Shown here piece by piece: positions 1,601 to 29,340 of a stretch of 64,000 nt of DNA. Origin of the DNA: Haplodiscus bocki (lineage: Eukaryota); the NCBI GenBank assembly GCA_965655095.1, contig OZ296656.1, positions 33,976,001-34,040,000 on the forward strand, in the 5' to 3' direction. Below the pieces are notes generated by a model. It was not told the DNA's origin and did no database searches. It was given only the letters and a program-made list of their open reading frames with translations. The position numbers and the translations under genes were made by a program. Every line of letters starts with the position of its first letter. Position 1 is the stretch's first letter.

Positions 1601-3151
1601 ACGCGAAAATGAACCACTACTTCTCGAAAGGACGCCATTTTTGGTTTTTGACCGTTTACACTGGATGACTAGACTCTCTGGAAACATCAAAAATGCAAGT
1701 TTTGGACAGGGCAAAAACTACACGTAAGTCGGTATCCAACACAAATTCTTCCTGTTAGTTTTGGTTATTCCCCAGAGCTTTTATCTTCAACACTTTTTTC
1801 ACAACTTTGAATTTTCAGAAGAAATTGCAAAAAGTAAAAGTATAATTTTAACATCCTATTTTAATACATTGATTTTCAAATTTAGTAGATTCAAGATGAA
1901 TTTTCGAATAGTTTTTGAAAACGTTTCTGCCGACAGATGATATCAGGTGTCGCAGAAACATCAGGGGCATCTATTGATGAAGGAAAATTCCAATTATTAA
2001 TTTTTTAAAGTTACGAAATTCTCAAAAGAATGCAAAATTTGGCCAAAAACCCATTTTCTAGTTTTTGCTCTATTCGTTGGAAATTTTTCAAACAAACACA
2101 AATATGTTCTCCTACAAATTCCAAGAATATTTTGTTTCTGGTACTTTTGTCCGAAATGATTATTCCCAAAGTTATTCGTGCTTAAAGTTGACTTATGCAT
2201 TAAAGTTGTCGCATTAATTAAATCACTACTGTATGCAGGGGGTATCGCAAACAAAATTTGGAAAATGCATATCATGGTAATTTGAAAAACTTAAGGATTG
2301 CAAAAATGTAGTTTGTGATAAAAAGAAAATTTTTGGATTATTTTGGTTTATGCGGGGGGGGGGGGGAATCGAGAGAAAGATTAGAAAATCATAAGAATTA
2401 TGTACTGAACTGAAAGGTGGTGTCACTGAAATTGGGCTGAAATGATCCGGAGGTGAAATGATGCCAAACCCAGAAATGGACATCACTGCCCGTGGTACTT
2501 GGTGGAACTAACTATGAAACGTATTCCTTAAATGCACCTTCAATTTATATTCTATTAATATTAGGTCATCTTACAACACCTTCAGCTTATGATTTCGAGG
2601 GGACAAATATACGTTTGGATGAACAAATCATTATACTGTTTTTGATGTGGCCAAGCTCGATCAATATCTAGTTCCAATATTTGGCATCAAAATGCAGTCA
2701 AGACGATTACATGCACTTGCTGTTACACAGAAAAATTAAGTTTTTAATTTTCGTGCTGAGTAATCATCAATAAGATACGTCTTAAAGCATGTTTTTAAAA
2801 GTTTGATTTTGAAAGCTGCATCAAAACTGGCGCGCCACTGCACCATGTGAGATAAACTCACCTTGTTTAATAATACGACCGACTTCTTCCACAAGTCAAA
2901 CCTTCAGCCGAAGAGACCTTCAGTTGGGGGTATTTTTCAAAAACTAGTAAATGAAATTCTACGGTATTTAGACAAAACAGCTCTTCTCAATAGCCTATTT
3001 TCAAAAAAGAATATCCCGAAAATCTTACACCCTTTCAAAAATGCTTTAATAAAAATCAGAATTTTAGAAGAACTCCAATAAAAAACGATTGTATCTGGGT
3101 TAGAGATTATTCAGCAAAATATGAGTCTCTATCTTTAATCAAGACACTAAC

Positions 3152-14425: not shown

Positions 14426-16308
14426 TGTGCACTGAAATCAGCGACACGCAAAAAAATCATCAGAAAAGTCTAGAACTATCTATTGCTAATTCCTAACTCA
14501 ATTAAAAAGCATATTATTTGAGACTGAAATTCAAAAAGAAATCCTCTTCTATAATTAAACGAACAAACTAGTTCAATAATGAAAACTATACTGCAAATGT
14601 AACAATGCTTAAGCTCCAAAACAACTCTCTCAACTGCTTTAAAAACACCATCAACAACCTTTTCAGCTCAGTAATTTCGGTCAAATTTCAGATTGTTGTT
14701 GCTCTGTTCTGAGAGGAAGCTGATTCTGACTCAAATACTCGGAGACAAATGGACGTCTGGTTGATAGGTAGCAGACACTACGAAAATATGCTTCCCTCAA
14801 ATCGGAATACTGCTGCCGCCCTAAATGAAATCTGTTTTTCTCCTTTTTAGAAATTTTCTCTAGAATTCATTGATTTATTGCTTTCAATTCAAAAAAATAT
14901 TTATCAAGGAAAAATTATCCAATCTTGAACCTTTTTCAAAATTCTTGAGCTCATTTTTCGTAGATTTTCTTGCAGTAATTTCTATTGAGAAGTCCCTCAT
15001 TGAAGAGGGTAAGGACCTGTTATTGGAGCCAGTTCGCTCGAAACAGCAGTTCCGTCAAGCCCCACAAAACAGCAGAAACTATCAGCAACCTCTTAAACAG
15101 CAAATTAATTGAGACTCTACCCGACTTTAATTAACCGTGCTTTCATTCTTGAAATCCTATTTAGAGGGAATCCATAAAACAAACCGACATTCAGTCTGTG
15201 GCGCAACATTGTGAACAATGCAGTTACAACACACATACGGAACATCCGATAACCCGAAATTATTTGTATTCTGATCGAATTACAGCAGCCTAATTGCTCT
15301 GATAAACTCATTAAAGTTTCATATCATTTATGAAATTTGCCCACGAAAGCACGGCGAAATTCTGTGACAGACAATGAGAGCAATGATGGGTCAATTCATC
15401 TCATTCAAGGCACTGGGACTGGTCCGGACGCCAAAGATTGTTGCGTGGACATCTATATGGTTGCCAAAGGGCATACCGAGAAACTTCATTGATTGCCCTT
15501 TTATGTGGTTTTTGCGCTGTATCGGGGTTTGTAGAGTGCAAAACATCACCAGCATGAAACAACGCCGATATCACGAGTTTACTTTTATCAGATTCAAAAG
15601 AACAGTATGGTTGACGTGACAACATCCGCATTTCTGGGGTTGAGAATAATCATGAGGATGTATATGAGCGTGTGGTGGAGGCGGCAAACGATATCAGAGT
15701 GACTATATCCAAACAAGAGATCGGTGTGTGTCATTGCCTGCGCTCTAAAAATCCTGTATCACGCCCAATAATTGCAAAGTTTGTCCGACATGAAACCGAA
15801 TTTCGCGTTATAACACATAAAAGACATTTTAAAACGAAAATTGAAAAAATTGTTTTGGTGACTATGTAACACCTTCGCGCGCAAATCAAAGAAGAGCCCT
15901 TCGCCAGCTCCACGACGTGAAATATGATGTTATATCTGAGGAAGACGTAGCTCGAACTATGTCCAATATTGAAAGGCTGTTTTCGAACAATTTTTATGAT
16001 TCACGTAAATGGGACATGGAATTTGTTGAATCTGTATCTAACGCGTTTGGGCATTCTCGGTAATGTATTTTTCAAAGAAACGATCCCACCCAAAAAAACG
16101 ATCGAAAGTAAAATAAAAATTTACGAAAGACACTGAAAACAGTCGAGAATTCAATGAAAGCCTAATTTTTGTGATAAACTTATTAAATAGATTTTTCCCT
16201 TCGTTTTTCACCGCGTTGTTTGTTTATAGATAAATTGCGCGCTAGAGCCTGGACTTATCTTCTATCCCAAGTCCCGTCGCTCTAGCCGTAGACGGGTGAA
16301 GTCTGCTT

Positions 16309-16920
16309 ATGGTGTTTAGACTGATTGGTGCCAGCTCTTTGAGAAACTGCAAGACAGCTTTTCGATCAGAGACTCCTTTCAGTCGCATCGACGCCGAGGG
16401 AGGCCTTTCCTTCAACCCTCGAAGCAAGTGCAAACTTGCCCAAGAGTGGCTCCAAGGAGAACTTAGTGGAGCAAGTGGATTGGTTATCTGGCACGACGCT
16501 GTCAATAATACAATCAACAGCCACGAAAAAAACGACTTCCAACCGTGTCCCATTGCAGAGTTTATCCAAACCTTAGTATCGCTGAGATCACGCATCACGG
16601 CAATGGTTTACATACAACGAAATGACACTGATAACGTGTTGACAGCACTCAAAGAAACCGGCATTGACATCATCGACATCGAATCGAAGGTTGACTTGAC
16701 AGACAAAGAATTCGAATCTGAACTCCGAAAAGTCCATCCAAAAGTTACAACGGAATTGAAGGTATTGCAAGCCGTTACAGACCATATTAAAGAAGTGCTA
16801 TCATCCAACATCACAGTTGCCCAACAGTTGAAGAAGAAAAAGAACAACCGTCCAAATCGGCGACAGCGACAACGCTTCCAGAAAAGAAACGCAGGTAGTC
16901 CTCTAATTCGAGCTCTCTGA
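16309..16920 (+). CDS. Element-borne ORF0, 203 aa, divergent SGNH/GDSL esterase-like protein with a basic C-terminal tail
   Basis: Intact ORF inside the insertion; LIGASSLR, GGLS, VIWHDAVNN and VHP resemble SGNH blocks I, II, III and V; tail KKKKNNRPNRRQRQRFQKR. The fold assignment is by motif eye-match only. Confidence 0.6.
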   Translation: MVFRLIGASSLRNCKTAFRSETPFSRIDAEGGLSFNPRSKCKLAQEWLQGELSGASGLVIWHDAVNNTINSHEKNDFQPCPIAEFIQTLVSLRSRITAMVYIQRNDTDNVLTALKETGIDIIDIESKVDLTDKEFESELRKVHPKVTTELKVLQAVTDHIKEVLSSNITVAQQLKKKKNNRPNRRQRQRFQKRNAGSPLIRAL

Positions 16921-16943
16921 TCTCCTCAGTGCCTTGAGAGAAG

Positions 16944-17040
16944 GATCTCTGTTGGCGAGAGCTTGCTCAGTGCCTCGGGTCTGATCTCTGTTGGCACGAG
17001 CTTGCTCAATGTCTCGGGTTCCTGATCTCTGTTGGCGCGA
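16944..17040 (+). repeat. ~39-41-nt tandem repeat (2.4 copies) between ORF0 and ORF1
   Basis: gatctctgttggc..gagcttgctca.tg.ctcgggt units start at 16944, 16983 and 17024. Confidence 0.9.
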
Positions 17041-17076
17041 GAAGAATCTCCTAGCAATTCTGAACTCCGCCATAAT

Positions 17077-18113
17077 ATGCCGAACATCATGAGTCATAAT
17101 CACAATACGAGATTGACTTCGACCAAGTACCCTGGTGGTGCATGCGCAGGTGAATGTAAAGACGGCTCGGTAGCATGTATTCTGTGCAATTCATGGTATC
17201 ACGCAGGTAACTGCTCAGGATTACCATCAAGCATCTTGATGGCCATGTCAAAAACCTCTGGACTGGTGTGGCTGTGCAAATCTTGCAAAACGAAGGGTAT
17301 GGAACGGTTGTTGAAAGACGAGAAGCAAATTGACGCTAAGGCGCAGGAAACGATTGTTGCAAAGGTCAAGGAAGACAAACTCGATGAGATTAGAGACACC
17401 AACACGAAGCTGATTGAAGATAAACTGTCACTTTTCCAACAAAACTTTGAAGCTAAACTTGAAAACTTACTTTCAGGAGACCGAAAAAGCGCACAGAGCT
17501 GGCCCGAAGTTACCCAACGGAATGCTCCCTTGGTGAAAGGTTTGGGAACCATCATGAAAGAGACGATTGAGAACGAAAGATTGGAACAAGCAGATCAAGA
17601 AAAACGGGAAAAAACGTCATCTTTCATCGAGTACCTGAGAGTGAAAAATCGGAGGCCAGTGCGAGAACTGGAGATGACATCAAGTTTTTCCAACAGCTCA
17701 CCGAAGACGTACTAGGTATTGGTGACCTCAAACCAACAAAAGCAATCAGACTTGGAGCAAAGAAAACATCAAAGGACAGCGACGGTACTACTGCAGAACG
17801 AGTGAGTTCAAGACCACTGAAGATTGTATTGCCTTCCAAGGAGGATCAGGACTTACTTTTCAAAAATTTGAGAAAGTTGAGAGCAGCAGACAAATCATTC
17901 GCTTCAATCAGCGTTTCATACAACTTCTCGCAAGATCTGAGGAAGCAGACCAAGTTGAAAATTGAAGAGGCCAAAAACAAAGATGGAGAGAATGCAAAAA
18001 ACTACATGTACAGAATGAGAGGACCTCCGAACAGACTAAAGGTACAGAAACTGAAGCGGAAAGAGGAATTGTCAGCGGAGAGCCTAGACGATGCCTTCGT
18101 CGACAATCCTTGA
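17077..18113 (+). CDS. CR1 ORF1 (PHD finger, coiled coil, RRM-like C-terminus), one frameshift
   Basis: CAGEC...CILCNSWYH...C...WLCKSC PHD finger. Adding one A to the A6 run at 17609-17614 gives REKNVIFHRVPE...IRLG...RPLKI, continuous with ORF 17802-18113. Confidence 0.85.
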
Positions 18114-20972
18114 AGTTTTTTTTTCCAATACTGATGCGATGCCAAACAAAAAGGAGGAAATAAGTGCAAGGCTAGTAAGTGGGAAGCCGGATGTTTTCGG
18201 CTTGATGGAAGTAAAACTAAAAAAGCATGGCTTTGTGATGGAGGAAGCAGATATCGCTTATGAAGGATATGACGCATTCTACAGCAAACAAATTAACAAC
18301 AAGGAACATCGAGGTACAATAGTATACGTTAGGCAGGATATTGGGCTTCAGTCTAGTCGAGTTGAGATCAACGGATGCCCAGAAGACACTATTCTTGTTC
18401 AACTTTGTAACGGAAAAAAAGAAAAAATCTTGTTCGGGTGCGTCTATCCTCCCTGGAAAGCAGATACCCAAGAGCAACAGGCCTTAATGAACACTCTTAG
18501 AGCTGTATCACACATGAGTTTTACGCACGAAGTTATCGTAGGAGATTTCAATTTCCCGAAAATTGATTGGTCCTTGAACTGGAGACCGCTTAATGAGAAC
18601 AGTAACGAGCACTCATTCACTGAATTGGTAAGGGACTGCTTCTGGCACCAACACGTCCAATTTGCAACAAGAGGCAGAGGATCTGATGACCCTAGCATTC
18701 TTGATCTTGTCTTCACGGATGCAGATACAGAGATCGACGACATGCAGTGCCAAGCTCCTTTTGGAAAGAGTGACCATTCGGTGATTTCTTTCGAACTCTC
18801 CCAGGTGGAAAGAACACGCTGCAAAAAAGGAACAAGATGGAAGTATGCTAAGGGAGACTACGAAAGCATGCGCGAGGTACTGTCAAACAACCACTGGGTT
18901 GATGTACTCTCTACTGCCCCAAGCGTCAACGAAGCATGGAATCTTGTAAAAGAAAGAATCAGCGCAGCAGTAGAAAAGTTTGTGCCAAAAGCCATTTCCG
19001 GATCCACAAAACAGTTTTCGGTTCCCTTGGATAAAGAGCTCTTACAACAAATCCGAAAGAAGAACAGCCTCTGGAGAAAATACCTCAGAGTCAAAACAAA
19101 AACAGCTTACAACAAGTTCTGCAGAGCGAGAAATGATTTCCGGAGTCGAACAAGGTCCAAAGCTAGAGAAATTGAAGACGAAATTGCCCGGGAAGCAAAA
19201 CGAAACCCGAAGAGATTTTGGACCTTTGTGAACTCAAAAGTTAAAGCCAGAACTGGCATAAGTGACCTCGTCTTGGAAGACGCAGAGGTAGTATCCTCAG
19301 ACACCAGAAAGGCTGAAGTCTTGAATACCTACTTCAGCAGTGTTTTTGTAGAAGAGAAAACCCCTCCCCCGGAAATTGACGAATTTGTTGTCGACTCATA
19401 CATTGAGGAGCCCCTCATAACTGAATCAGCCATCAGGAAGAAGTTGGCAGAACTAAACAGGACAAAGTCACCGGGCTTTGACGAAATCCATCCTCATGTG
19501 CTTGCCGAACTGTCAAAAGTTTTGACTGAACCACTGCAGATCATTTTTTTAAGCACCATTGCTGAAAGCGAGCTACCCGAGGACTGGAAGGAGGCGAGGG
19601 TGACAGCACTCTTCAAGAAAGTTGACAAAAAGAAAGTGGAGAACTATCGACCGGTCAGCCTAACATGCATCGCATGTAAAGTACTAGAAAGCATTATCAG
19701 AGATGATATCATTTCCCACCTGACGTCGAACAACTTGATTTCTGATAGACAATATGGCTTCGTGAAAGGACGATCGACGAGTCTACAATTGCTGAAAGTC
19801 TTAGAAGAGTGGACACAGATTCTTGATAGAGGAGGAGGCATTGACTGCGTTTATTGTGACTTCCAAAAAGCCTTTGATAAGGTTCTATATTGGAGACTGA
19901 TGGCAAAGATCTGGTCATACGGAATTCGAGGAAAGTTATACCGATGGATAGAAACTTTCCTAACAAAGAGGAAGCAACATGTGGCTGTCAACGGTCAAAA
20001 CTTGTCCAAAAGTCTAGTCTTGAGTGGAGTCCCGCAAGGAAGCGTTCTAGGGCCACTTCTTTTCCTGTGATCTTCATAAACGACATACCTGCAGCTGTTG
20101 AGAATGAAGCATGGATGTTCGCAGATGATACAAAGATCTACCAAGAGGTGAACTGTAAGGAAGATGGTGAATCGCTTCAAAATGACCTCTACAGGCTTGA
20201 AGATTGGAGCAAAAAATGGCTGCTGCCGTTTCATCCGAAAAAGGCAAAGATCCTAAAGTTTGGAAGAGCCAAGAAGCTTGAACGAGAGTACTACGCCGAG
20301 CGAGGGAAACTACTACTGATCTCAAGCGATAATACTGAGACGGACTTAGGACTGACATTTGACACAGACCTGAAAATCGAAAAACACATTGCGAATAAAG
20401 TCAATAAAGCCAATCGATTGGTTGGCCTCATCAAACGGACCTTTCAATTGGATATTTTGAAGTTCAGATTCCTCTTCCGAGGCATTGTTAGACCGCACCT
20501 AGAGTACGCCACTTATGTATGGAACCCCACGTCAGTCAAACTCCAAAACCTCATCGAGAATGTGCAAAGAAGGGCTTCAAAACGTGTACATGAGTTAAAA
20601 GAGCTATCTTACGAAGAGAGACTGAAAAAACTTGACATGCCAACCTTAGCATATAGACGCTTGAGAGGAGATATGATTGAAGTCTTCAAAATGCTTACCA
20701 ACAACTCTGGGTACGATCAATCTGTGACGACAAGTCTGCTGACCCGTGAGGGGCACAATAGGACCAGAGGCCACGCACTGAAGCTGAAAATGAATAAAAG
20801 TAGAACTAGCCTTAGGAAGCATTTCTTCACACAGAGGGTGGTGAAAAAGTGGAACAACCTCCCTAGAGAGGTTATCGAATCCGTTAACACCACTACATTC
20901 AAATCAAGGCTGGACAAGTGCTGGGAGAAAAGAAAATTCATGTTGAGACCAACACAGATGAAGTTGCAGTGA
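18091..20972 (+). CDS. CR1 ORF2: apurinic endonuclease + reverse transcriptase, one frameshift
   Basis: VGDFN, LDLVFT, SDH (APE); NYRPVSLT, DFQKAFDKV, SGVPQGSVLGPLLF, FADDTK, VRPHLEY, RTRGH, FFTQRVV (CR1 RT). Frameshift at ~20065. Confidence 0.95.
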
Positions 20973-21016
20973 GGTCCAGTAACACTTGCAGTGAAAGAAG
21001 TCACTAGCATTGGGAG

Positions 21017-21067
21017 CTGTGAATAGAGGACTACCTGCTCACAGTACTGAACAGATGAACAGATGAA
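21017..21067 (+). other. LINE 3' stem-loop plus microsatellite tail
   Basis: CTGTGA (21017-21022) pairs with TCACAG (21039-21044) around an inner AGG/CCT stem, followed by TGAACAGA repeats; typical of CR1/L2 3' ends. Confidence 0.7.
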
Positions 21068-22376
21068 TGGATTTTTCACGTCGGTATTCGTTTGCTTAGA
21101 AAGTACTTTTGTAATTAAGAGCTATATTAAAACTTTTTGGCAATAATAGGCCATATATTGTAGGTTTTTCAGAAGAATAGTTACCAATTGTAAAAGAACT
21201 TCAAATGTTACAACTAAACAATTACTTGCCTATGATTTTTCACCTTGGTTTCAACGGAAAAGTCGGTGTCGTCGTTTATCTACACGGATCCGTCGAACAT
21301 GGCGTGGTATGCAGTAAAGCAAAGCCTTGTCACAAAATCATTGAATCAGCTAATAAGAACAACCAGTGTGTTGTTGTGGTTTGAATTGCTAGTAAATGAC
21401 ATTCCCAATTTAATAGTCTCCCCAGTTTTTATTGAACGCGAGTTGAAAGTTGATCTTCTGCGACAAAACAATTTGTCTAGTAGTCTAGTACTAGTCAAAA
21501 AACTGCAGCATAACGGAGTGACGCAACTACTGATGAATGCAATATGAAGTACCATAGATTCAGCAACTTGATTGATCATGTATTTCATAACCATTCCTTT
21601 GACAATCCTGACTGCGGTATACTTGATGCTGGTTTAACTAACCACTGTGCAATTTCTGTGAAACTGTCATTCGGTTGTTAAAATTATGATGATACTGAAA
21701 CTACATTTAATATTTTTCCTTTCATTCTTAAGGAAAATGCCAGAGAAGTTTATTTGGAACAACTTTCAAATAAACTAAAAATGCCCCATCTCTATGTTGA
21801 CCTTGATGAAAAATTTCAGATGTCCTTTGAACCCCTACAAAGTAGTAGTGAAATAAGCAGATCTGTAAGACAATGGAAAAAGAAAAATGTAAATCACATC
21901 AGTTTAGTAAAGAAATCAAAATCTCTATCTGTAAGAAAAACTTGCATTAGAGTGCTTCAGAGAATTACCAACGGCTTCGAAAAAAACAAGACTCACACAA
22001 ACCAGTCAAAAACCAATTTTGTTGTTAAAGAAGCCAACTGCAATTTCTTTCAACTGTTTTGTCAAATTGAATGAACAAACCATAAAAGTTCAACAAGTTG
22101 CTTAATGAAAGAACAGGTAAGAGGAGCGTGAAAACAAACATGAATTTTACTAATGAAAACAAAGACACCATCAAATCAGTTGATTGCAGATATGTTCAAT
22201 AAAACATTCTTCAACTTTGCAACTACTGCTGAAGGTCCAACGACACAAGAGCATAAATAAAGTATTGAAAATTTTGATATTAATGATGACAATATGTTTG
22301 CCTTCGCGATTAAAAAGGACTAAGTCTTTTTAAGACGATAGGTAATTTGAAAAACAAAAAAACCATTGGACTTGGT

Positions 22377-22704
22377 GTCTCATCTGAAGTGCTTGAAACT
22401 TCGCTTCCGGTGCCGAATCTTTTTTCAATTGATTTTCCTAATCTATCTATGTCACGCGATTGGTTCCCGAAGTACCTAAGAAACGCAAAAGTTAACCTTT
22501 TACACAAGTCGGAAGACAAAATAAGTATCAAAAACTATACGTCTCATCTGAAGTGCTTGAAACTTCGCTTCCGGTGCGTAATCTTATTTCAATTGATTTT
22601 CCTAATCTATCTCTGTCACGCGATTCGTTCCCGAAGTACCTAAGAAACGCAAAAGTAAATCTTTTACACAAGTCGGAGGACAAAATAAGTATCAAAAATT
22701 ATAC
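22377..22704. repeat. 164-bp tandem duplication inside the dead LINE ORF2
   Basis: 22377-22540 and 22541-22704 are nearly identical, with GTC microhomology at the junctions. Confidence 0.92.
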
Positions 22705-25049
22705 GTCCAGTTCGATTTTACCAGCTATTAGTAAAGTGCTCCAGAAAAACATATATGAACGAACTTTCTTCAATTTCCGATTGAAAAAATTTGCTCTACT
22801 CGAGGCAGTCTGGTTTTCACAGTAAACGAAGTACTATCGAAAGTCATGCTGAAAATAGAGATTACTTTATGCAAGGGAGTACTGATTCACTCACGTGTAT
22901 CTTGCTTGATTTGGGTAGGGCGTTTGAATCAAATAATCATCTAGTTTTATTACTTGAACTGAAAAAACATGGTGTCAGATGAATTTGTTTAACGTGATGT
23001 GGATCATACTTAAAAGAACGACCTCAGGGTGTTCAGGTAGATGATGTACTTCTGGATTTCCTGTACCTGCTGGTAGGAGTTCCGCAATGCTCAAATCGAG
23101 GGCCTCTATTGTTTTTAATATACACCAATGATCAACCAGGTGCTTCTGATTTTCCTGACTCAATTTAATTTGCTGACGACACGAATCCTATTTATCGTAA
23201 AAATCAGGATGAGTTGTTTTTGCTGAATAAAATTTTGAAAAAAATTACCAAATGGCTATCTGTCAATAGGCTTGCTTTAATTATAAATAAAACTTTTTTT
23301 TGAAATATCAAGGCGAAGATATTCATTTATCACACTCCATCACTGAGCAAAAAATTTATGTAAAGTTTTCTGAAATTTTATTCGATAAACATTTATAATT
23401 TAATTTTGATATACCTAAAAAATTGTCAAAACTTTATTCAGTAATAACACAATTAAGACGCTAAGTTAAAAAAATCTGTGCTTCTCCAGTACTATAATAT
23501 TTATATTAAACCGGTTATTGGATATGATCGCCTACTTTATAGCTGTACTTCAAAATAAAGATTGAAACCTAAATTTACAGAAAAAGATACTGGGACAAAT
23601 TTGTCTCGAAGCTCGTTTTTATCCGTCTGCAGAACTTTTCATTCAATTAAATGTTGTACATGTCTTAGTCTTTTCGACGGTTGAGCTTTTAATTTTTTTC
23701 CTAAATCAATTTTTACTGTTCTACCAATTGAAAATTTTAACTCGTTTTATGAGCGCAGAAAATCTAATGTTCGAACGAGAAAACCTCAACTTAAGCTTTT
23801 TTTTCTGCCAAATGAATGCGGCTCTGTTAGTCGTAATTCCTTTCATAACAGAGGTGCAAAGCTGATCAATCGCTTATTAGAAACAAGTTTGAGTACAGTT
23901 GAATTCTCGACAAAAATCGAGCGTAAAACATTGAAACTTTTGCAACATGTAAAAATGAAATGTCAAACTTCGAATACAGTTTTTCAGTGAGATTGCCCAT
24001 CATGTGCTCTTACTTTGTTCGGGTCGTCATCTCACATTTTGGTGGAATCCCTCTGATGGTGCTATTTATAATTTATATCTACATGTATTTACTTTTTTAA
24101 TATATATTTGTATTTATCTATAAATGTAATTCTTTTAATTGGTTATCATCAGAAAAATCAATTTCTTAGTCTCATTCTTTTTCCTAATTTCTGTAGAGCC
24201 CAAGAGGGGTGTCATCTGTTGCTAGCGCCAAAGAATCCCCGATATCTACCAAACGCATCTCTAGTCGGACATCTCCTAATTACATCGGCTGACAGGAAAG
24301 TGATTTCCAACGGGGAAAAATGAGAAGCAGACACCTAACGAAAACAACAAATTGCGATCAAACATCTCCGAACAACCGGGAAATTTGGAGTCGTTTGTCA
24401 ACAAAGCGGCCAGCAACCACAACAACCTGCCTCAAGTGAGAGGACAAAGATAGAACGAGAGAAAAAAGCGAGCTCCAATGAAAAAGACGAAAAAACAAGC
24501 GTCAGCCGGATGCTGGTTGTATTCTCGTAGCTTCCTGCTGCAGATTCTTTTAGCAGTCTTGGTGGAAACTGGAGACTGACAGGAGGAAAATCTCCCAAGA
24601 ATCAGCAGTCTGGTGTAATTGTTGTCTTGTTTTTTGATTTTTAATATACCACAAGTCGGCCACCTTTTGTGTCAGGTCACTGAAGCGATGATTCCAACAA
24701 AGCGTACTGCTTCGAATAGCTGTGTGGTATGCGAAATCCTTACAAGACTAGTGGAACCTGGTGCTGCGTTACATGTGCAGGTGAAACTCAACGCAGTACG
24801 AAACTGCAGCGGCTTTGAAACTTCCGGAAGGAAAATCAGAAAACAAAACCAGTTAGAACACAATCGTCAACAATGTGAAAACACTAATGAAAGATTTCTA
24901 CTATCTTATAAACGGAACTAACGTCAAGGCCCGTGCGCCATTTTAGAAGGAAGAAAACCAAACAAAAGAAAATAAATTCAACTATTTGGGCCAAGGCCGT
25001 CAAAGAGTTTGTTGGTAGACACTTTAGCTGAACAAGAAAAGAAAGTTAA

Positions 25050-27128: not shown

Positions 27129-29340
27129 AGCCTTATCGGTGTCAGTACTCACTTTTCTCCATTGTGAATCAAAATCGGTACATTTTGTCATTGAACTTAC
27201 GGCGTGTTCAAGCATAGCGGAAAGGAAGTCCAAAAATTAGTTTCACCGATTCAAATGAAAATCTCAACGCAAATTTCGACATCATCATCAGAACAAATGG
27301 AGACATCGAGATTGAGGTCACAAAAATTAAGACCTGCGCCAATTTATCTTGAAAGTTTGCTGCGCAGCGTAATACGGATCCATAGCGTTTACCACTGCTG
27401 ATAAGATAGGACAACCATCAAAATGAACGTTGAAAAACCTGAAGAAAACAAACTTAACATGGAAAAGGCTCAACCAAATCGGAATTAAAATCCGAGAGAA
27501 ACCTGAAAAAAAAGTTCGACATTCAAAATTCGGAAACTTGAAAACAGAGGAAGAAGTAGCGTTACTTCAAGCTGACATCAAAAAAGATGTCAATAATTTG
27601 CAGATCATTTTGGCAAACATTTGACTGTTATACCATGAATTCTGATGAGGAAGGTAGAGAAAGCCTGTTATACATCTGCGAGTTCTCAGAGTTCAAAGTA
27701 CTTACAGAAAATAAGGTTCTGAAAAAGTTCAATTGTGCAATTATTTCATCGAAAAGCATTTTTTTTGGTTACTTCGATAAACCGAGCTCCATCTTGGACA
27801 ATTTAGAACAACAAAAGCTTTTGAAAGAAATCCTCAGAAACGTTTGAGATAACCGAACAGAAAATAACGTTTTGGGAGAAATGACAGTCTGCGAATAAGT
27901 TTAGAAAAAAAACAGTACAAACCGCAACACGACCATTGAAGAACACCAACTTCTAAAAGCTCTTAAAGACTATTATATGGACCGAAAAATTGACCACCTC
28001 ACGAGAGTTGCAAAAAAATAGAATCCTTAACTTCTGCAGCAACTAGGAACATAAATACGTTTTGTGTCTTCATTCATCTAGTACGTCCTATTATATATAA
28101 TAAATGTAATAAAAGGGGAAAGACAAACACGACCTCCTACAAGCGATACTCAAAACTACGAAGGTTGTTGCGCGAACACTCAATGGAACTACCGCAGAGT
28201 AATCTATTTAAGTTTTCATGCCGAAACAAATTGAACAACCTCCTCAACAAAATGATGGCAGCTAAGGAAAACTAAAACAATTTTAAAAGTGGCTTGCTAA
28301 GTGCGACCGGCGAATTTCTGCAGAAACGAAAATACTCCTCAACAGGCAAACGGAAGTGCTACTATAGCTGAGCAAAAAGTGATTAAAACGCTGAAAGAAG
28401 GAGTTGATTGGATATCTTCAGCAGAAATAAAACAAAGTAACGCGAGTTAAAAAGACGTTGAAGAAAAAAACATTATAATCTTATGGGCTCCAAGAAAAAA
28501 ACTGAGTTGAATTGAATATTAACGACAAAAAACAACATGAAAACTGGGGAGCTTCCTCAACGGATAACTAAAATTGGGCGAGACAAAACATTCAATGAAA
28601 CTCTGCACAGCCACATTGCAACAACAGGCAAGGAATTTGGAGGAATTTCAGGAGTTTTCTCAACTGGCGATTGAATTAAAGCAGATAAAAAAACTAGTAA
28701 TTGTCAAATGGATTGAAACTCACGGAGCAGATAAAGTTGAGTGCAATTGAAACACTGGAATTAGCAAAATCTAGAGGACGAGGGAAACCTAATCCTCGTA
28801 ATCAGTACCAAGTAAAAAATGGAACTGCTCCAATTCTGAGGTTATTCTAAATGAACCATGGAAAAACGGTGAAATGACTGATTTTTGAAAAAGTCCAATC
28901 AAAGCGAGGATATCAAAAAAGACAAAAAAGAAGAAGTCCGAATAACTAAACACCTGTAAATATGACCAAAGATCGTTACAAACTAAAATAACGATCCGTT
29001 GGACACACATTCTTGATTTTTTTTCGATGGAAACTGACTAGCCTAAAACCAACAGTTTGGCTTTGAACCCGGCAGTTCAATTTTGCAAGAGTATACCAGA
29101 AAACTGGAGAACCTGACCTCAGAAATTGATAAAGGCGAGGAAATTCACACGGTAAACGTTGATTTCTACGAAAGGTTTTGCCAGTGTTGCGCCCAACAAA
29201 CCCGTTCAAGCAATATTCAGATATGGGGTACGAAGCAAAAGATTCGCATGCCTTATCGCATTTTCGATCAATCGGAAACAATGAGTGAAAACACTTCTTC
29301 CTAAGCACCGTGTATCAATGGCGTAACTCGACCGGTCAAT
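27129..29340 (+). mobile_element. Heavily decayed, internally deleted CR1-like LINE
   Basis: EIDKGEEIHTVNVDF resembles LDKG..VD.IYLDF; YGVR and NRKQ remnants at 29120-29330; upstream K/E-rich ORF1-like fragments. Boundaries approximate. Confidence 0.5.

What the first reader, a model, noticed from the sequence alone, without database searches (positions are those of the whole stretch)
16159..16190. Different LINE families start with the same 32-nt AG-ending leader: candidate spliced-leader (SL)-capped retrotransposons
Seen: the young CR1 begins exactly at its TSD with AGCCTAATTTTTGTGATAAACTTATTAAATAG. The old LINE family has AGCCTAATTGCTCTGATAAACTCATTAAAG at 15287-15316 (26/30 aligned) and AGCCTAAATGTTGTGGAAAACTTAATAAGCAG at 36127-36158 (25/32; 8 nt inside its TSD). 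Similarity between the two families stops right after the AG, while the two old copies stay colinear. A weak fourth echo lies at 27129-27153. Established: SL trans-splicing adds a common short exon to many mRNAs in several animal phyla, and retrocopied SL relics are known in dinoflagellates. Inference: LINE RNAs are trans-spliced and reverse transcribed through the SL. The integrated SL-terminal AG could then act as a trans-splice acceptor, regenerating a precise capped 5' end from read-through transcription without an internal promoter. This would be functionally analogous to the R2 5' ribozyme.
Basis: partly seen in the sequence, partly recalled or inferred. Interest (0 to 1): 0.88.

Follow-up and report, generated by a model that had tools for sequence, protein, structure and literature searches.

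The report
Host spliced leader heading LINE copies
The shared 32-base start of these jumping genes is the worm's own spliced leader (already published for the acoel Symsagittifera roscoffensis), so their RNAs were trans-spliced like host mRNAs before being copied back into DNA.

Summary
The 32-mer sits at 16159-16190 at the exact 5' end of a young CR1-like LINE. Decayed copies (26/32 each) head two colinear copies of an old, unrelated LINE at 15287 and 36127. The "fourth echo" at 27129 is chance (16/32).

The motif is a real spliced leader (SL). It is identical to the SL published for Symsagittifera roscoffensis (PMC9911081). The genome holds about 700 leader+GTAAGT genes, with a large tandem SL RNA-5S rRNA array on the same chromosome. 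About 840 further dispersed copies have unrelated flanks. In 29 sampled copies the leader is joined, always exactly at the exon end, to 14 unrelated bodies. Most of these bodies carry the PHD-finger ORF1 and endonuclease ORF2 of LINEs.

About 20% of CR1 copies carry the leader on an internal 3' splice site 38 nt further in. Rare leader-leader and leader-spacer-leader copies suggest that inserted copies are transcribed from upstream and spliced again.

Reuse of the leader's own terminal AG stays untested, because no RNA runs were served.

The SL itself is known. SL-headed LINE families were not found in the searchable literature. This scan has reported the same thing on other windows of this genome.

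The parts
16159..16190 (+). Genome-encoded copy of the host spliced leader (T instead of G at position 10), forming the first 32 nt of the young LINE
   Evidence: It differs from the published SL only at position 10. It lies inside the insertion, as shown by the empty paralogous site.
16191..16308 (+). 5' UTR of the young CR1-like LINE, which follows the leader's terminal AG directly
   Evidence: In 32 of 40 scored genomic copies the leader and this body align as one piece.
16216..16229 (+). Internal pyrimidine-rich tract ending in ATAG. Other copies of the family carry the leader directly after it (alternative junction).
   Evidence: 7 of 40 copies in the genome and 3 of 10 full-length copies picked by ORF1 (L064-L066) read leader|ATAAATTGCG.
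16309..16920 (+). First ORF of the young LINE (203 aa, no Pfam family)
   Evidence: A cluster of 25 near-identical proteins exists in a public assembly of the same species.
17032..17715 (+). ORF with a PHD-like zinc finger (weak hit in this copy)
   Evidence: E 0.0016, below Pfam's cut-off. Other SL-headed families show the same motif, scoring above Pfam's cut-off in two of four.
18091..20972 (+). ORF2 with AP-endonuclease and reverse transcriptase domains, broken by a frame shift near 19890-20070
   Evidence: Exo_endo_phos, Exo_endo_phos_2, RVT_1.
21047..21069 (+). 3' end of the young LINE: short tandem repeats of ACAGATGA and no poly(A). The exact end lies between 21062 and 21069.
   Evidence: other copies end in the same repeats.
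15287..15316 (+). Decayed leader copy at the 5' end of old LINE copy 1
   Evidence: 26/32.
15317..24190 (+). Old LINE copy 1, split by the young LINE into 15317-16158 and 21070 to about 24190. An RT remnant lies at about 22610-23294.
   Evidence: tblastn E 4e-14 to the RT of another LINE.
36127..36158 (+). Decayed leader copy at the 5' end of old LINE copy 2
   Evidence: 26/32.
36159..41800 (+). Old LINE copy 2, colinear with copy 1. It has an RT remnant at about 40395-40802 and a (CTT)n tail at about 41670-41800, and it holds the uninterrupted site near 38700.
27129..27153 (+). Reported 'fourth echo': not a leader copy
   Evidence: 16/32 matches, well inside the chance range.

Best explanation
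The 32-mer is a DNA copy of the host's spliced leader. Shown: the animal has SL RNA genes whose first exon is this sequence, and the published SL of this acoel is identical. Shown: many unrelated LINE families start with the leader, joined exactly at the exon's 3' end, inside the inserted unit and in unrelated genomic places. Inferred: LINE primary transcripts that begin upstream of an acceptor AG are trans-spliced by the host spliceosome. The capped SL-LINE RNA is translated, and the LINE's own endonuclease/RT copies it in full, so each full-length insertion starts with the leader. Inferred from alternative junctions, stacked leaders and leader-spacer-leader copies: splicing happens repeatedly, at more than one acceptor. 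At least some inserted copies are transcribed again from upstream DNA and re-enter the cycle. Not shown: that the leader's own terminal AG is the usual acceptor in such read-through RNA. The relic does offer a branch-point-like CTAAT 25 nt before an A/T-rich ...ATAG.
For: Identity: the leader matches the published SL 31/31, and only that paper and its preprint hold the sequence. SL RNA genes: 713 leader+GTAAGT sites against 0 for the control, and a tandem array on C9 from 72.47 Mb. Each unit holds a TATA-like box, the donor inside a stem, a U-rich Sm-like site, a terminal stem-loop and a 5S rRNA gene. Dispersal: 1554 sites at 3 or fewer mismatches and 986 exact. In 29 of 29 non-gene copies the flanks are unrelated (apart from one duplicated pair) and no intron bases follow the leader. 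These copies fall into 14 unrelated bodies. The representatives scanned show PHD ORF1 and endonuclease ORF2. The window gives a clean filled/empty site pair. Alternative junction after an internal pyrimidine tract + AG: 7/40 and 3/10 copies. Re-use of inserted copies: leader-leader overlapping on AG upstream of a CR1 copy; L007 with a fresh leader + 64 nt + relic leader + body; a contig with leader + 38 nt + leader. A leader variant (A at position 26) occurs 23 times, across CR1 copies of both junction types and mostly elsewhere. This fits a shared pool better than descent within one LINE lineage. Precedent at RNA level: about 30% of Hydra TE Iso-Seq reads carry an SL (PMC12220107).
Against: No RNA evidence was obtained. 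The only runs served are contigs of unknown kind that look like DNA. The alternative junction could also be a deletion between two ATAGAT repeats. The three alternative-junction copies share no diagnostic site, but a single origin is not rejected (p-AU 0.28). Stacked leaders and L007 could come from RT template jumps between SL-bearing RNAs. The 64-nt spacer of L007 has no other clear genomic match, so neither a parent locus nor a donor gene was found. Leader copies picked without regard to the leader have decayed as fast as the body (12/352 = 3.4%), so they give no sign of renewal. The CR1 tree is star-like, which a few master loci would also give.
Confidence: 0.85

Rival explanations
1. Master-gene version. 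Trans-splicing is real, but only a few master loci with their own upstream promoter and outron supply the RNA. SL-headed insertions lack a promoter and are dead on arrival, and the relic leader has no function.
For: The CR1 tree is star-like, with internal branches of 0.2% or less. The two junction types are intermixed, as alternative splicing of one master RNA would give. One copy reads leader + 118 nt + body with no relic leader in between, as expected from a further upstream acceptor in a master's outron.
Against: No copy with a non-leader upstream region was seen among 11 copies picked by ORF1; the one copy without a leader is simply 5'-truncated. Leader-leader and leader-spacer-leader copies show a relic leader inside a precursor RNA. 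A composite of leader + 199 nt of one family + leader + another family exists (L019), and a second locus has the same spacing.
Confidence: 0.3
2. Templated leader. The leader was captured by trans-splicing once or a few times per family. It is then inherited as part of the element, because an internal promoter in the 5' UTR starts transcription at the leader's first base, as in classical LINEs.
For: The relic decays at the same rate as the body. Two CR1 copies share the rare T at position 10, and two share A at position 26. LINE internal promoters that start at +1 are well established (own knowledge: jockey, I factor, L1).
Against: All 14 sampled families with unrelated bodies carry the canonical leader (one with a single substitution), although that sample was selected for near-perfect leaders. 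An old family whose copies differ by about 20% includes a member with a perfect leader (L008). The A26 variant is spread over many families rather than one lineage. The two T10 CR1 copies are not close kin. Alternative junctions need a precursor that extends upstream of the acceptor.
Confidence: 0.2
3. RT template switching. On reaching the 5' end of an uncapped LINE RNA, the RT jumps onto SL RNA or an SL-bearing mRNA, as in human U6-L1 chimeras. No trans-splicing of LINE RNA is needed.
For: Occasional odd 5' ends look like jumps: L022 (a partial leader lacking its last 6 nt, then a full leader) and possibly L007 and L069.
Against: A jump onto SL RNA would carry intron bases, and 0 of 29 copies do. 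The junction is always the exon end, and the body start is constant within a family.
Confidence: 0.05
4. A shared LINE promoter motif, a 5'-end swap between families, or site-specific insertion into SL RNA genes (NeSL/SLACS type).
For: A separate LINE that inserts into the SL RNA genes of this genome is described in an earlier, unchecked note of this scan (s1-364264).
Against: The motif is the first exon of about 700 SL RNA genes and the published SL. The flanks of the dispersed copies are unrelated and are not SL RNA gene sequence, and the window copy sits inside another LINE.
Confidence: 0.01

Closest known systems
Spliced leader of Symsagittifera roscoffensis (Martinez et al., G3 2022, PMC9911081)
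   Same: The sequence is identical over 31 nt. The SL RNA genes have a donor, stem-loops and many copies.
   Different: The paper describes the leader on mRNAs and the SL RNA genes. It does not mention leader copies at LINE 5' ends, the 5S linkage or the dispersed copies.
Relic spliced leaders on dinoflagellate retrogenes (own knowledge: Slamovits and Keeling 2008; PMC5585692, PMC12014239)
   Same: A DNA-encoded leader at the 5' end of retrocopies shows that a trans-spliced RNA was reverse transcribed. A stacked leader cut at an internal AG occurs here too.
   Different: There the leader tags host gene retrocopies, and stacking is common. Here it heads autonomous LINE families in an animal, and exact stacking was found once in 1.5 Gb.
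SL on transposon transcripts in Hydra (PMC12220107)
   Same: Host SL trans-splicing acts on TE RNA.
   Different: That is RNA-level evidence only. Leader copies in the genomic elements were not reported in the passage read.
R2 HDV-like ribozyme and L1Tc ribozyme/Pr77 (PMC3185411; own knowledge for R2)
   Same: If the relic leader serves as acceptor, the outcome is the same: a defined 5' end cut out of a co-transcript, with no need for an upstream promoter.
   Different: The means differ (host spliceosome, not self-cleavage), and a capped 5' end is added. No Rfam ribozyme is present at 15000-17000.
NeSL-1, SLACS, CZAR, CRE (site-specific LINEs in SL RNA genes; own knowledge)
   Same: A link between LINEs and the SL system.
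   Different: Those elements insert into SL RNA genes. The copies here are dispersed and carry only the leader exon as part of their own RNA.

Membership tests
Spliced-leader exon of an SL RNA | The same short sequence caps many unrelated mRNAs and is not encoded at their loci | tested here: met
   It matches 31/31 the leader reconstructed from unmapped transcript 5' ends, with 30.2% of genes trans-spliced (PMC9911081). My own RNA check was not possible.
Spliced-leader exon of an SL RNA | Gene with the leader followed by a GT donor, in many copies | tested here: met
   713 leader+GTAAGT sites against 0 for the control, and a tandem array on C9 from 72.47 Mb.
Spliced-leader exon of an SL RNA | Donor inside stem-loop I, then a single-stranded Sm site, then a 3' stem-loop | tested here: inconclusive
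   The fold shows both stem-loops (-27.3 kcal/mol, z -3.3). The U-rich stretch between them only resembles an Sm site, and binding is untested.
Spliced-leader exon of an SL RNA | Linkage to 5S rRNA genes (frequent, not obligatory) | tested here: met
   5S rRNA scores 118 and 104 bits downstream of the SL RNA in L031 and L004.
Retrocopy of a trans-spliced RNA | The leader lies inside the inserted unit, at its exact 5' end | tested here: met
   Filled site in old copy 1 against the empty site in old copy 2.
Retrocopy of a trans-spliced RNA | The junction coincides with the exon's 3' end, with no intron bases | tested here: met
   29 of 29 non-gene copies and 10 of 10 copies picked by ORF1.
Retrocopy of a trans-spliced RNA | SL-LINE junctions present in RNA with a non-templated leader | not testable with these tools
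   No RNA run was served, and the runs laid are contigs that look like DNA.
CR1-clade LINE (young element) | ORF2 with AP endonuclease and RT | tested here: met
CR1-clade LINE (young element) | 3' end of short tandem repeats instead of poly(A) | tested here: met
   ACAGATGA repeats in the window and in 8 other copies.
CR1-clade LINE (young element) | RT groups with CR1 in a phylogeny | not tested
   No reference RT set was at hand, so 'CR1-like' rests on architecture only.
Site-specific LINE of SL RNA genes (NeSL/SLACS type) | Inserted at a fixed position within SL RNA genes | tested here: not met
   The flanks are unrelated and are not SL RNA gene sequence.
U6-L1-type chimeric retrocopy | The 5' partner is the whole small RNA | tested here: not met
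   Only the exon is present; 0/29 copies carry intron bases.
Ribozyme-processed LINE 5' end (R2, L1Tc) | Self-cleaving ribozyme at the 5' end | tested here: not met
   No Rfam match at E of 1 or below in 15000-17000. An undescribed ribozyme is not excluded.

The most novel reading that the evidence does not exclude
LINEs of this animal have given up their own promoter. The relic leader (branch-point-like CTAAT, an A/T-rich tract, then AG) is a portable 3' splice site. Any insertion lying in sense within a transcribed region is then cut out of the read-through RNA and given a fresh capped leader, so every such copy is a potential source. This would be a spliceosome-based counterpart of the R2 and L1Tc ribozymes, and possibly a general LINE strategy in SL trans-splicing animals.
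Probability: 0.35. Interest if true: 0.8.

Novelty: new variant of a known kind. Interest (0 to 1): 0.6.

Why it matters
How LINEs obtain a complete, translatable 5' end after each jump is a long-standing question. Known answers are internal promoters and 5' ribozymes. Here, many LINE families in a bilaterian carry the host's spliced leader in their DNA. This shows that the RNAs that jump are host-processed, capped, trans-spliced molecules. It also offers a natural tag for full-length insertions, for dating them, and for asking whether trans-splicing lets promoter-less copies stay active. A practical consequence follows: about 840 near-perfect dispersed leader copies, and many more decayed ones, will confuse SL-based gene annotation and operon calls in this genome.

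Tried and rejected
I did not work around it. Later genome searches asked for counts and coordinates only.

3. RNA evidence: the run search returned four runs of unknown kind, kept as contigs. Their depth profile looks like DNA, with the leader at about 2000 times the unique flank. They cannot show starts, strands or trans-splicing.

4. The T/G variant at leader position 10 proved uninformative. Only one SL RNA gene has T. Three retrocopies have it, in two families. The two CR1 copies with T are not close kin. Independent mutation cannot be excluded.

5. A test of whether alternative-junction copies form a clade was undecided (0 shared diagnostic sites, p-AU 0.28).

6. A search for a parent locus or donor gene of the L007 spacer found nothing clear.

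7. Pfam on pieces of the old family found nothing. tblastn with LINE RTs from this genome did find RT remnants.

8. Target-site duplications of the old copies were not found.

9. The bacterial promoter/terminator scan is irrelevant to an animal genome.

10. Literature searches for SL-headed LINEs in animals found none. The library is incomplete, so this is not proof of novelty.

Full report
**1. What is in the window**

The reported 32-mer is at 16159-16190. Variants lie at 15287-15316 and 36127-36158. Against the genome's main leader form they score 31/32, 26/32 and 26/32 without gaps. No other site in the 64 kb exceeds 20/32. Shuffled sequence gives about 0.2 sites at 22/32 or better. The "fourth echo" at 27129 scores 16/32 and is chance.

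The element that starts at 16159 runs to about 21069.
- It has a 118-nt 5' UTR and a 203-aa first ORF.
- A second ORF has a weak PHD-finger hit.
- ORF2 carries AP-endonuclease and reverse transcriptase domains and is broken by one frame shift.
- The 3' end is made of ACAGATGA repeats.

This is a CR1-like architecture. I did not place the RT in a tree.

The young element interrupts old element copy 1 (15287-16158 plus 21070 to about 24190). Old copy 2 (36127 to about 41800) is colinear with copy 1 and shows the uninterrupted site near 38700. The leader is therefore part of the inserted unit and is its first base. The only duplication at the site is up to 5 nt (ATGAA), and it cannot be told from the element's own 3' repeat.

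The old family has RT remnants with about 30% amino-acid identity to the young element's RT. It shares no DNA similarity with the young element beyond the leader.

**2. The motif is the host's spliced leader**

The whole genome (1.5 Gb; the window is C9:33,976,001-34,040,000) holds 1554 matches at 3 or fewer mismatches and 986 exact matches to the main form. The reversed control gives none.

Leader + GTAAGT occurs 713 times at 2 or fewer mismatches. It includes a tandem array on the same chromosome from 72.47 Mb, with units of 1.7-2.9 kb. Each unit has these parts:
- a TATA-like box about 38 nt upstream;
- the leader, then the donor GTAAGT inside a stem formed by the leader's 3' half;
- a U-rich Sm-like stretch and a GC-rich terminal stem-loop (fold -27.3 kcal/mol, z -3.3);
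- a 5S rRNA gene about 130 nt downstream.

The unit length varies in steps of a 168-bp minisatellite.

A full-text search found the sequence in one paper and its preprint: the genome report of the acoel Symsagittifera roscoffensis. Its leader was rebuilt from transcript 5' ends that do not map to the genome. It is identical over 31 nt, and 30.2% of genes are trans-spliced. The genome is that species or a very close relative. A public assembly reached through the look-up of encoding contigs shares a locus with it, flank included (L070 = L003).

**3. Many LINE families start with the leader**

Of the 30 sites fetched, one is a solitary SL RNA-5S gene (L004, the only SL RNA gene with T at position 10).

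The other 29 have these properties:
- Their upstream flanks are unrelated, apart from one duplicated pair.
- No intron bases follow the leader.
- Their downstream sequences fall into 14 unrelated groups.
- Most groups show the same architecture: an ORF1 with a PHD finger, then an ORF2 that opens with an AP endonuclease.
- None is an obvious host-gene retrocopy.

One group is the window's young family. Another (L008) is related to the window's old family at 77-79% and carries a perfect leader.

Unselected DNA in the fetched loci holds further decayed leader copies, roughly one per 25-30 kb. The process is therefore old and continuing.

**4. Signs that splicing, not inheritance alone, puts the leader there**

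(a) The junction is always the exon's end.

(b) The young family has two junctions.
- A BLAST of leader + 368 nt of body scored 40 genomic copies. In 32 the leader runs straight into the body. In 7 it is joined 38 nt further in. In 1 it is separated from the body by 118 unrelated nt.
- Eleven copies picked by their ORF1 protein, not by the leader, gave 7 canonical, 3 alternative and 1 plainly 5'-truncated.
- The alternative junction lies directly after a pyrimidine-rich tract ending ...TTTATAG (window 16216-16229), a textbook 3' splice site.
- Caveat: both junctions read ATAG|AT, so a deletion between 6-nt repeats would give the same product.
- The three alternative copies share no diagnostic substitution in 2.3 kb, and one shares five sites with a canonical copy. 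Still, an AU test does not reject a single origin (p 0.28), and the tree is star-like.

(c) A leader variant with A at position 26 occurs 23 times, against about 2-3 expected for an average single substitution.
- It is found on CR1 copies of both junction types but mostly on other sequences.
- No canonical SL RNA gene carries it. Two sites have it followed by GT.
- This spread fits a common pool of leader RNAs better than descent within one LINE lineage.
- Its source is unresolved. It could be a variant gene, or a recurrent copying error at one leader position.

**5. Are inserted copies used again?**

Several copies look as if they were transcribed from upstream and spliced again.
- One CR1 copy carries two leaders that overlap on AG. 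The upstream leader is joined to the relic right after the relic's first AG. This is seen in L069 and, from coordinates, at C2:94,693,359-94,693,420. It is the only such site in the genome.
- L007 reads fresh leader + 64 nt + relic leader lacking its first 4 nt + body.
- A contig reads leader + 38 nt + leader (table 5c).
- By coordinates, C6:48,951,913-48,952,342 reads leader + 34 nt + leader + alternative-junction body.
- L019 is a composite: leader + 199 nt of one family + leader + another family. A second locus has two leaders at the same spacing.

Each case can also be read as an RT template jump between SL-bearing RNAs. The L007 spacer has no other clear match in the assembly.

Leader copies picked without bias have decayed as fast as the body (12/352 against about 3%), so they neither support nor exclude it. 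The relic does look like an intron end: a CTAAT branch-point-like motif 25 nt before an A/T-rich ...ATAG.

**6. RNA**

The run search returned no run on record as RNA. The four runs served are contigs whose depth (leader at about 2000 times the unique flank, LINE body at about 50-60 times) looks like DNA. I therefore could not test expression, read-through or the origin of the leader on RNA.

**7. Comparison and novelty**

The leader and its genes are already published. Known relatives of the phenomenon are:
- relic leaders on dinoflagellate retrogenes;
- SL on about 30% of Hydra TE transcripts;
- LINEs that insert into SL RNA genes;
- ribozyme-processed LINE 5' ends.

No ribozyme family matches the 5' regions here. 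I found no paper describing animal LINE families whose genomic copies begin with the host leader. The library is incomplete.

Earlier notes of this scan on other windows of this genome reached the same reading. I treat them as agreement, not as independent proof.

**8. Verdict**

The reading as SL-capped retrotransposons is supported. The proposed reuse of the leader's AG is open. This is a new variant of known kinds, of moderate to high interest.

Noticed in passing
L031-L060 (G000 C9:72,472,247 onward), L043:1-954 and 1929-3026: The SL RNA genes sit in a large tandem array together with a 5S rRNA gene. Unit length varies in steps of a 168-bp minisatellite in the spacer.
   Followed up: partly
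L005, L009, L013, L023 and L016, L018, first 40 nt after the leader: Two related LINE families carry, right after the junction, a 13-14 nt complement of the leader's 3' end. The RNA 5' end folds into a 14-bp hairpin that mimics stem-loop I of the SL RNA. Its function is unknown. It would bury the relic's terminal AG.
   Followed up: partly
23 sites genome-wide (e.g. G000 C7:85610121-85610152); also L065, L068 and window 36127-36158: A leader variant with A at position 26 is about ten times more frequent than an average single substitution. It is spread over several families and is not encoded by any canonical SL RNA gene in the assembly. Two sites (C3:122315960, C5:31733012) have it followed by GT.
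   Followed up: partly
L019:1501-1764; G000 C3:132332698-132332964: A composite 5' end: leader + 199 nt of one LINE family + a second leader + another family. A second locus shows two leaders at the same spacing, which suggests the composite itself was copied.
   Followed up: partly
G000 C2:64767908-64768428 (minus strand): A CR1 copy whose perfect leader is separated from the normal body start by 118 nt that are neither leader nor CR1. This may be a trace of an upstream acceptor or of a master locus. The letters could not be fetched.
   Followed up: no
L022:1475-1532: A partial leader (lacking its first bases and its last 6 nt) lies directly upstream of a complete leader. It looks like an RT template jump at the RNA 5' end.
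   Followed up: no
window 36673-38543: Old LINE copy 2 holds about 1.87 kb that copy 1 lacks, with minus-strand ORFs of 136 and 180 aa and no Pfam hit. It is probably a nested insertion.
   Followed up: no
window 22377-22704: A tandem duplication of a 164-nt unit (95% identity) lies inside old LINE copy 1.
   Followed up: no
window 41670-41800: A long (CTT)n tract follows the 3' end of old LINE copy 2. It is possibly the family's 3' tail.
   Followed up: no
L004 (G000 C11:90,775,172-90,778,203): A solitary SL RNA-5S unit outside the main array is the only SL RNA gene with T at leader position 10, and its intron differs slightly.
   Followed up: partly
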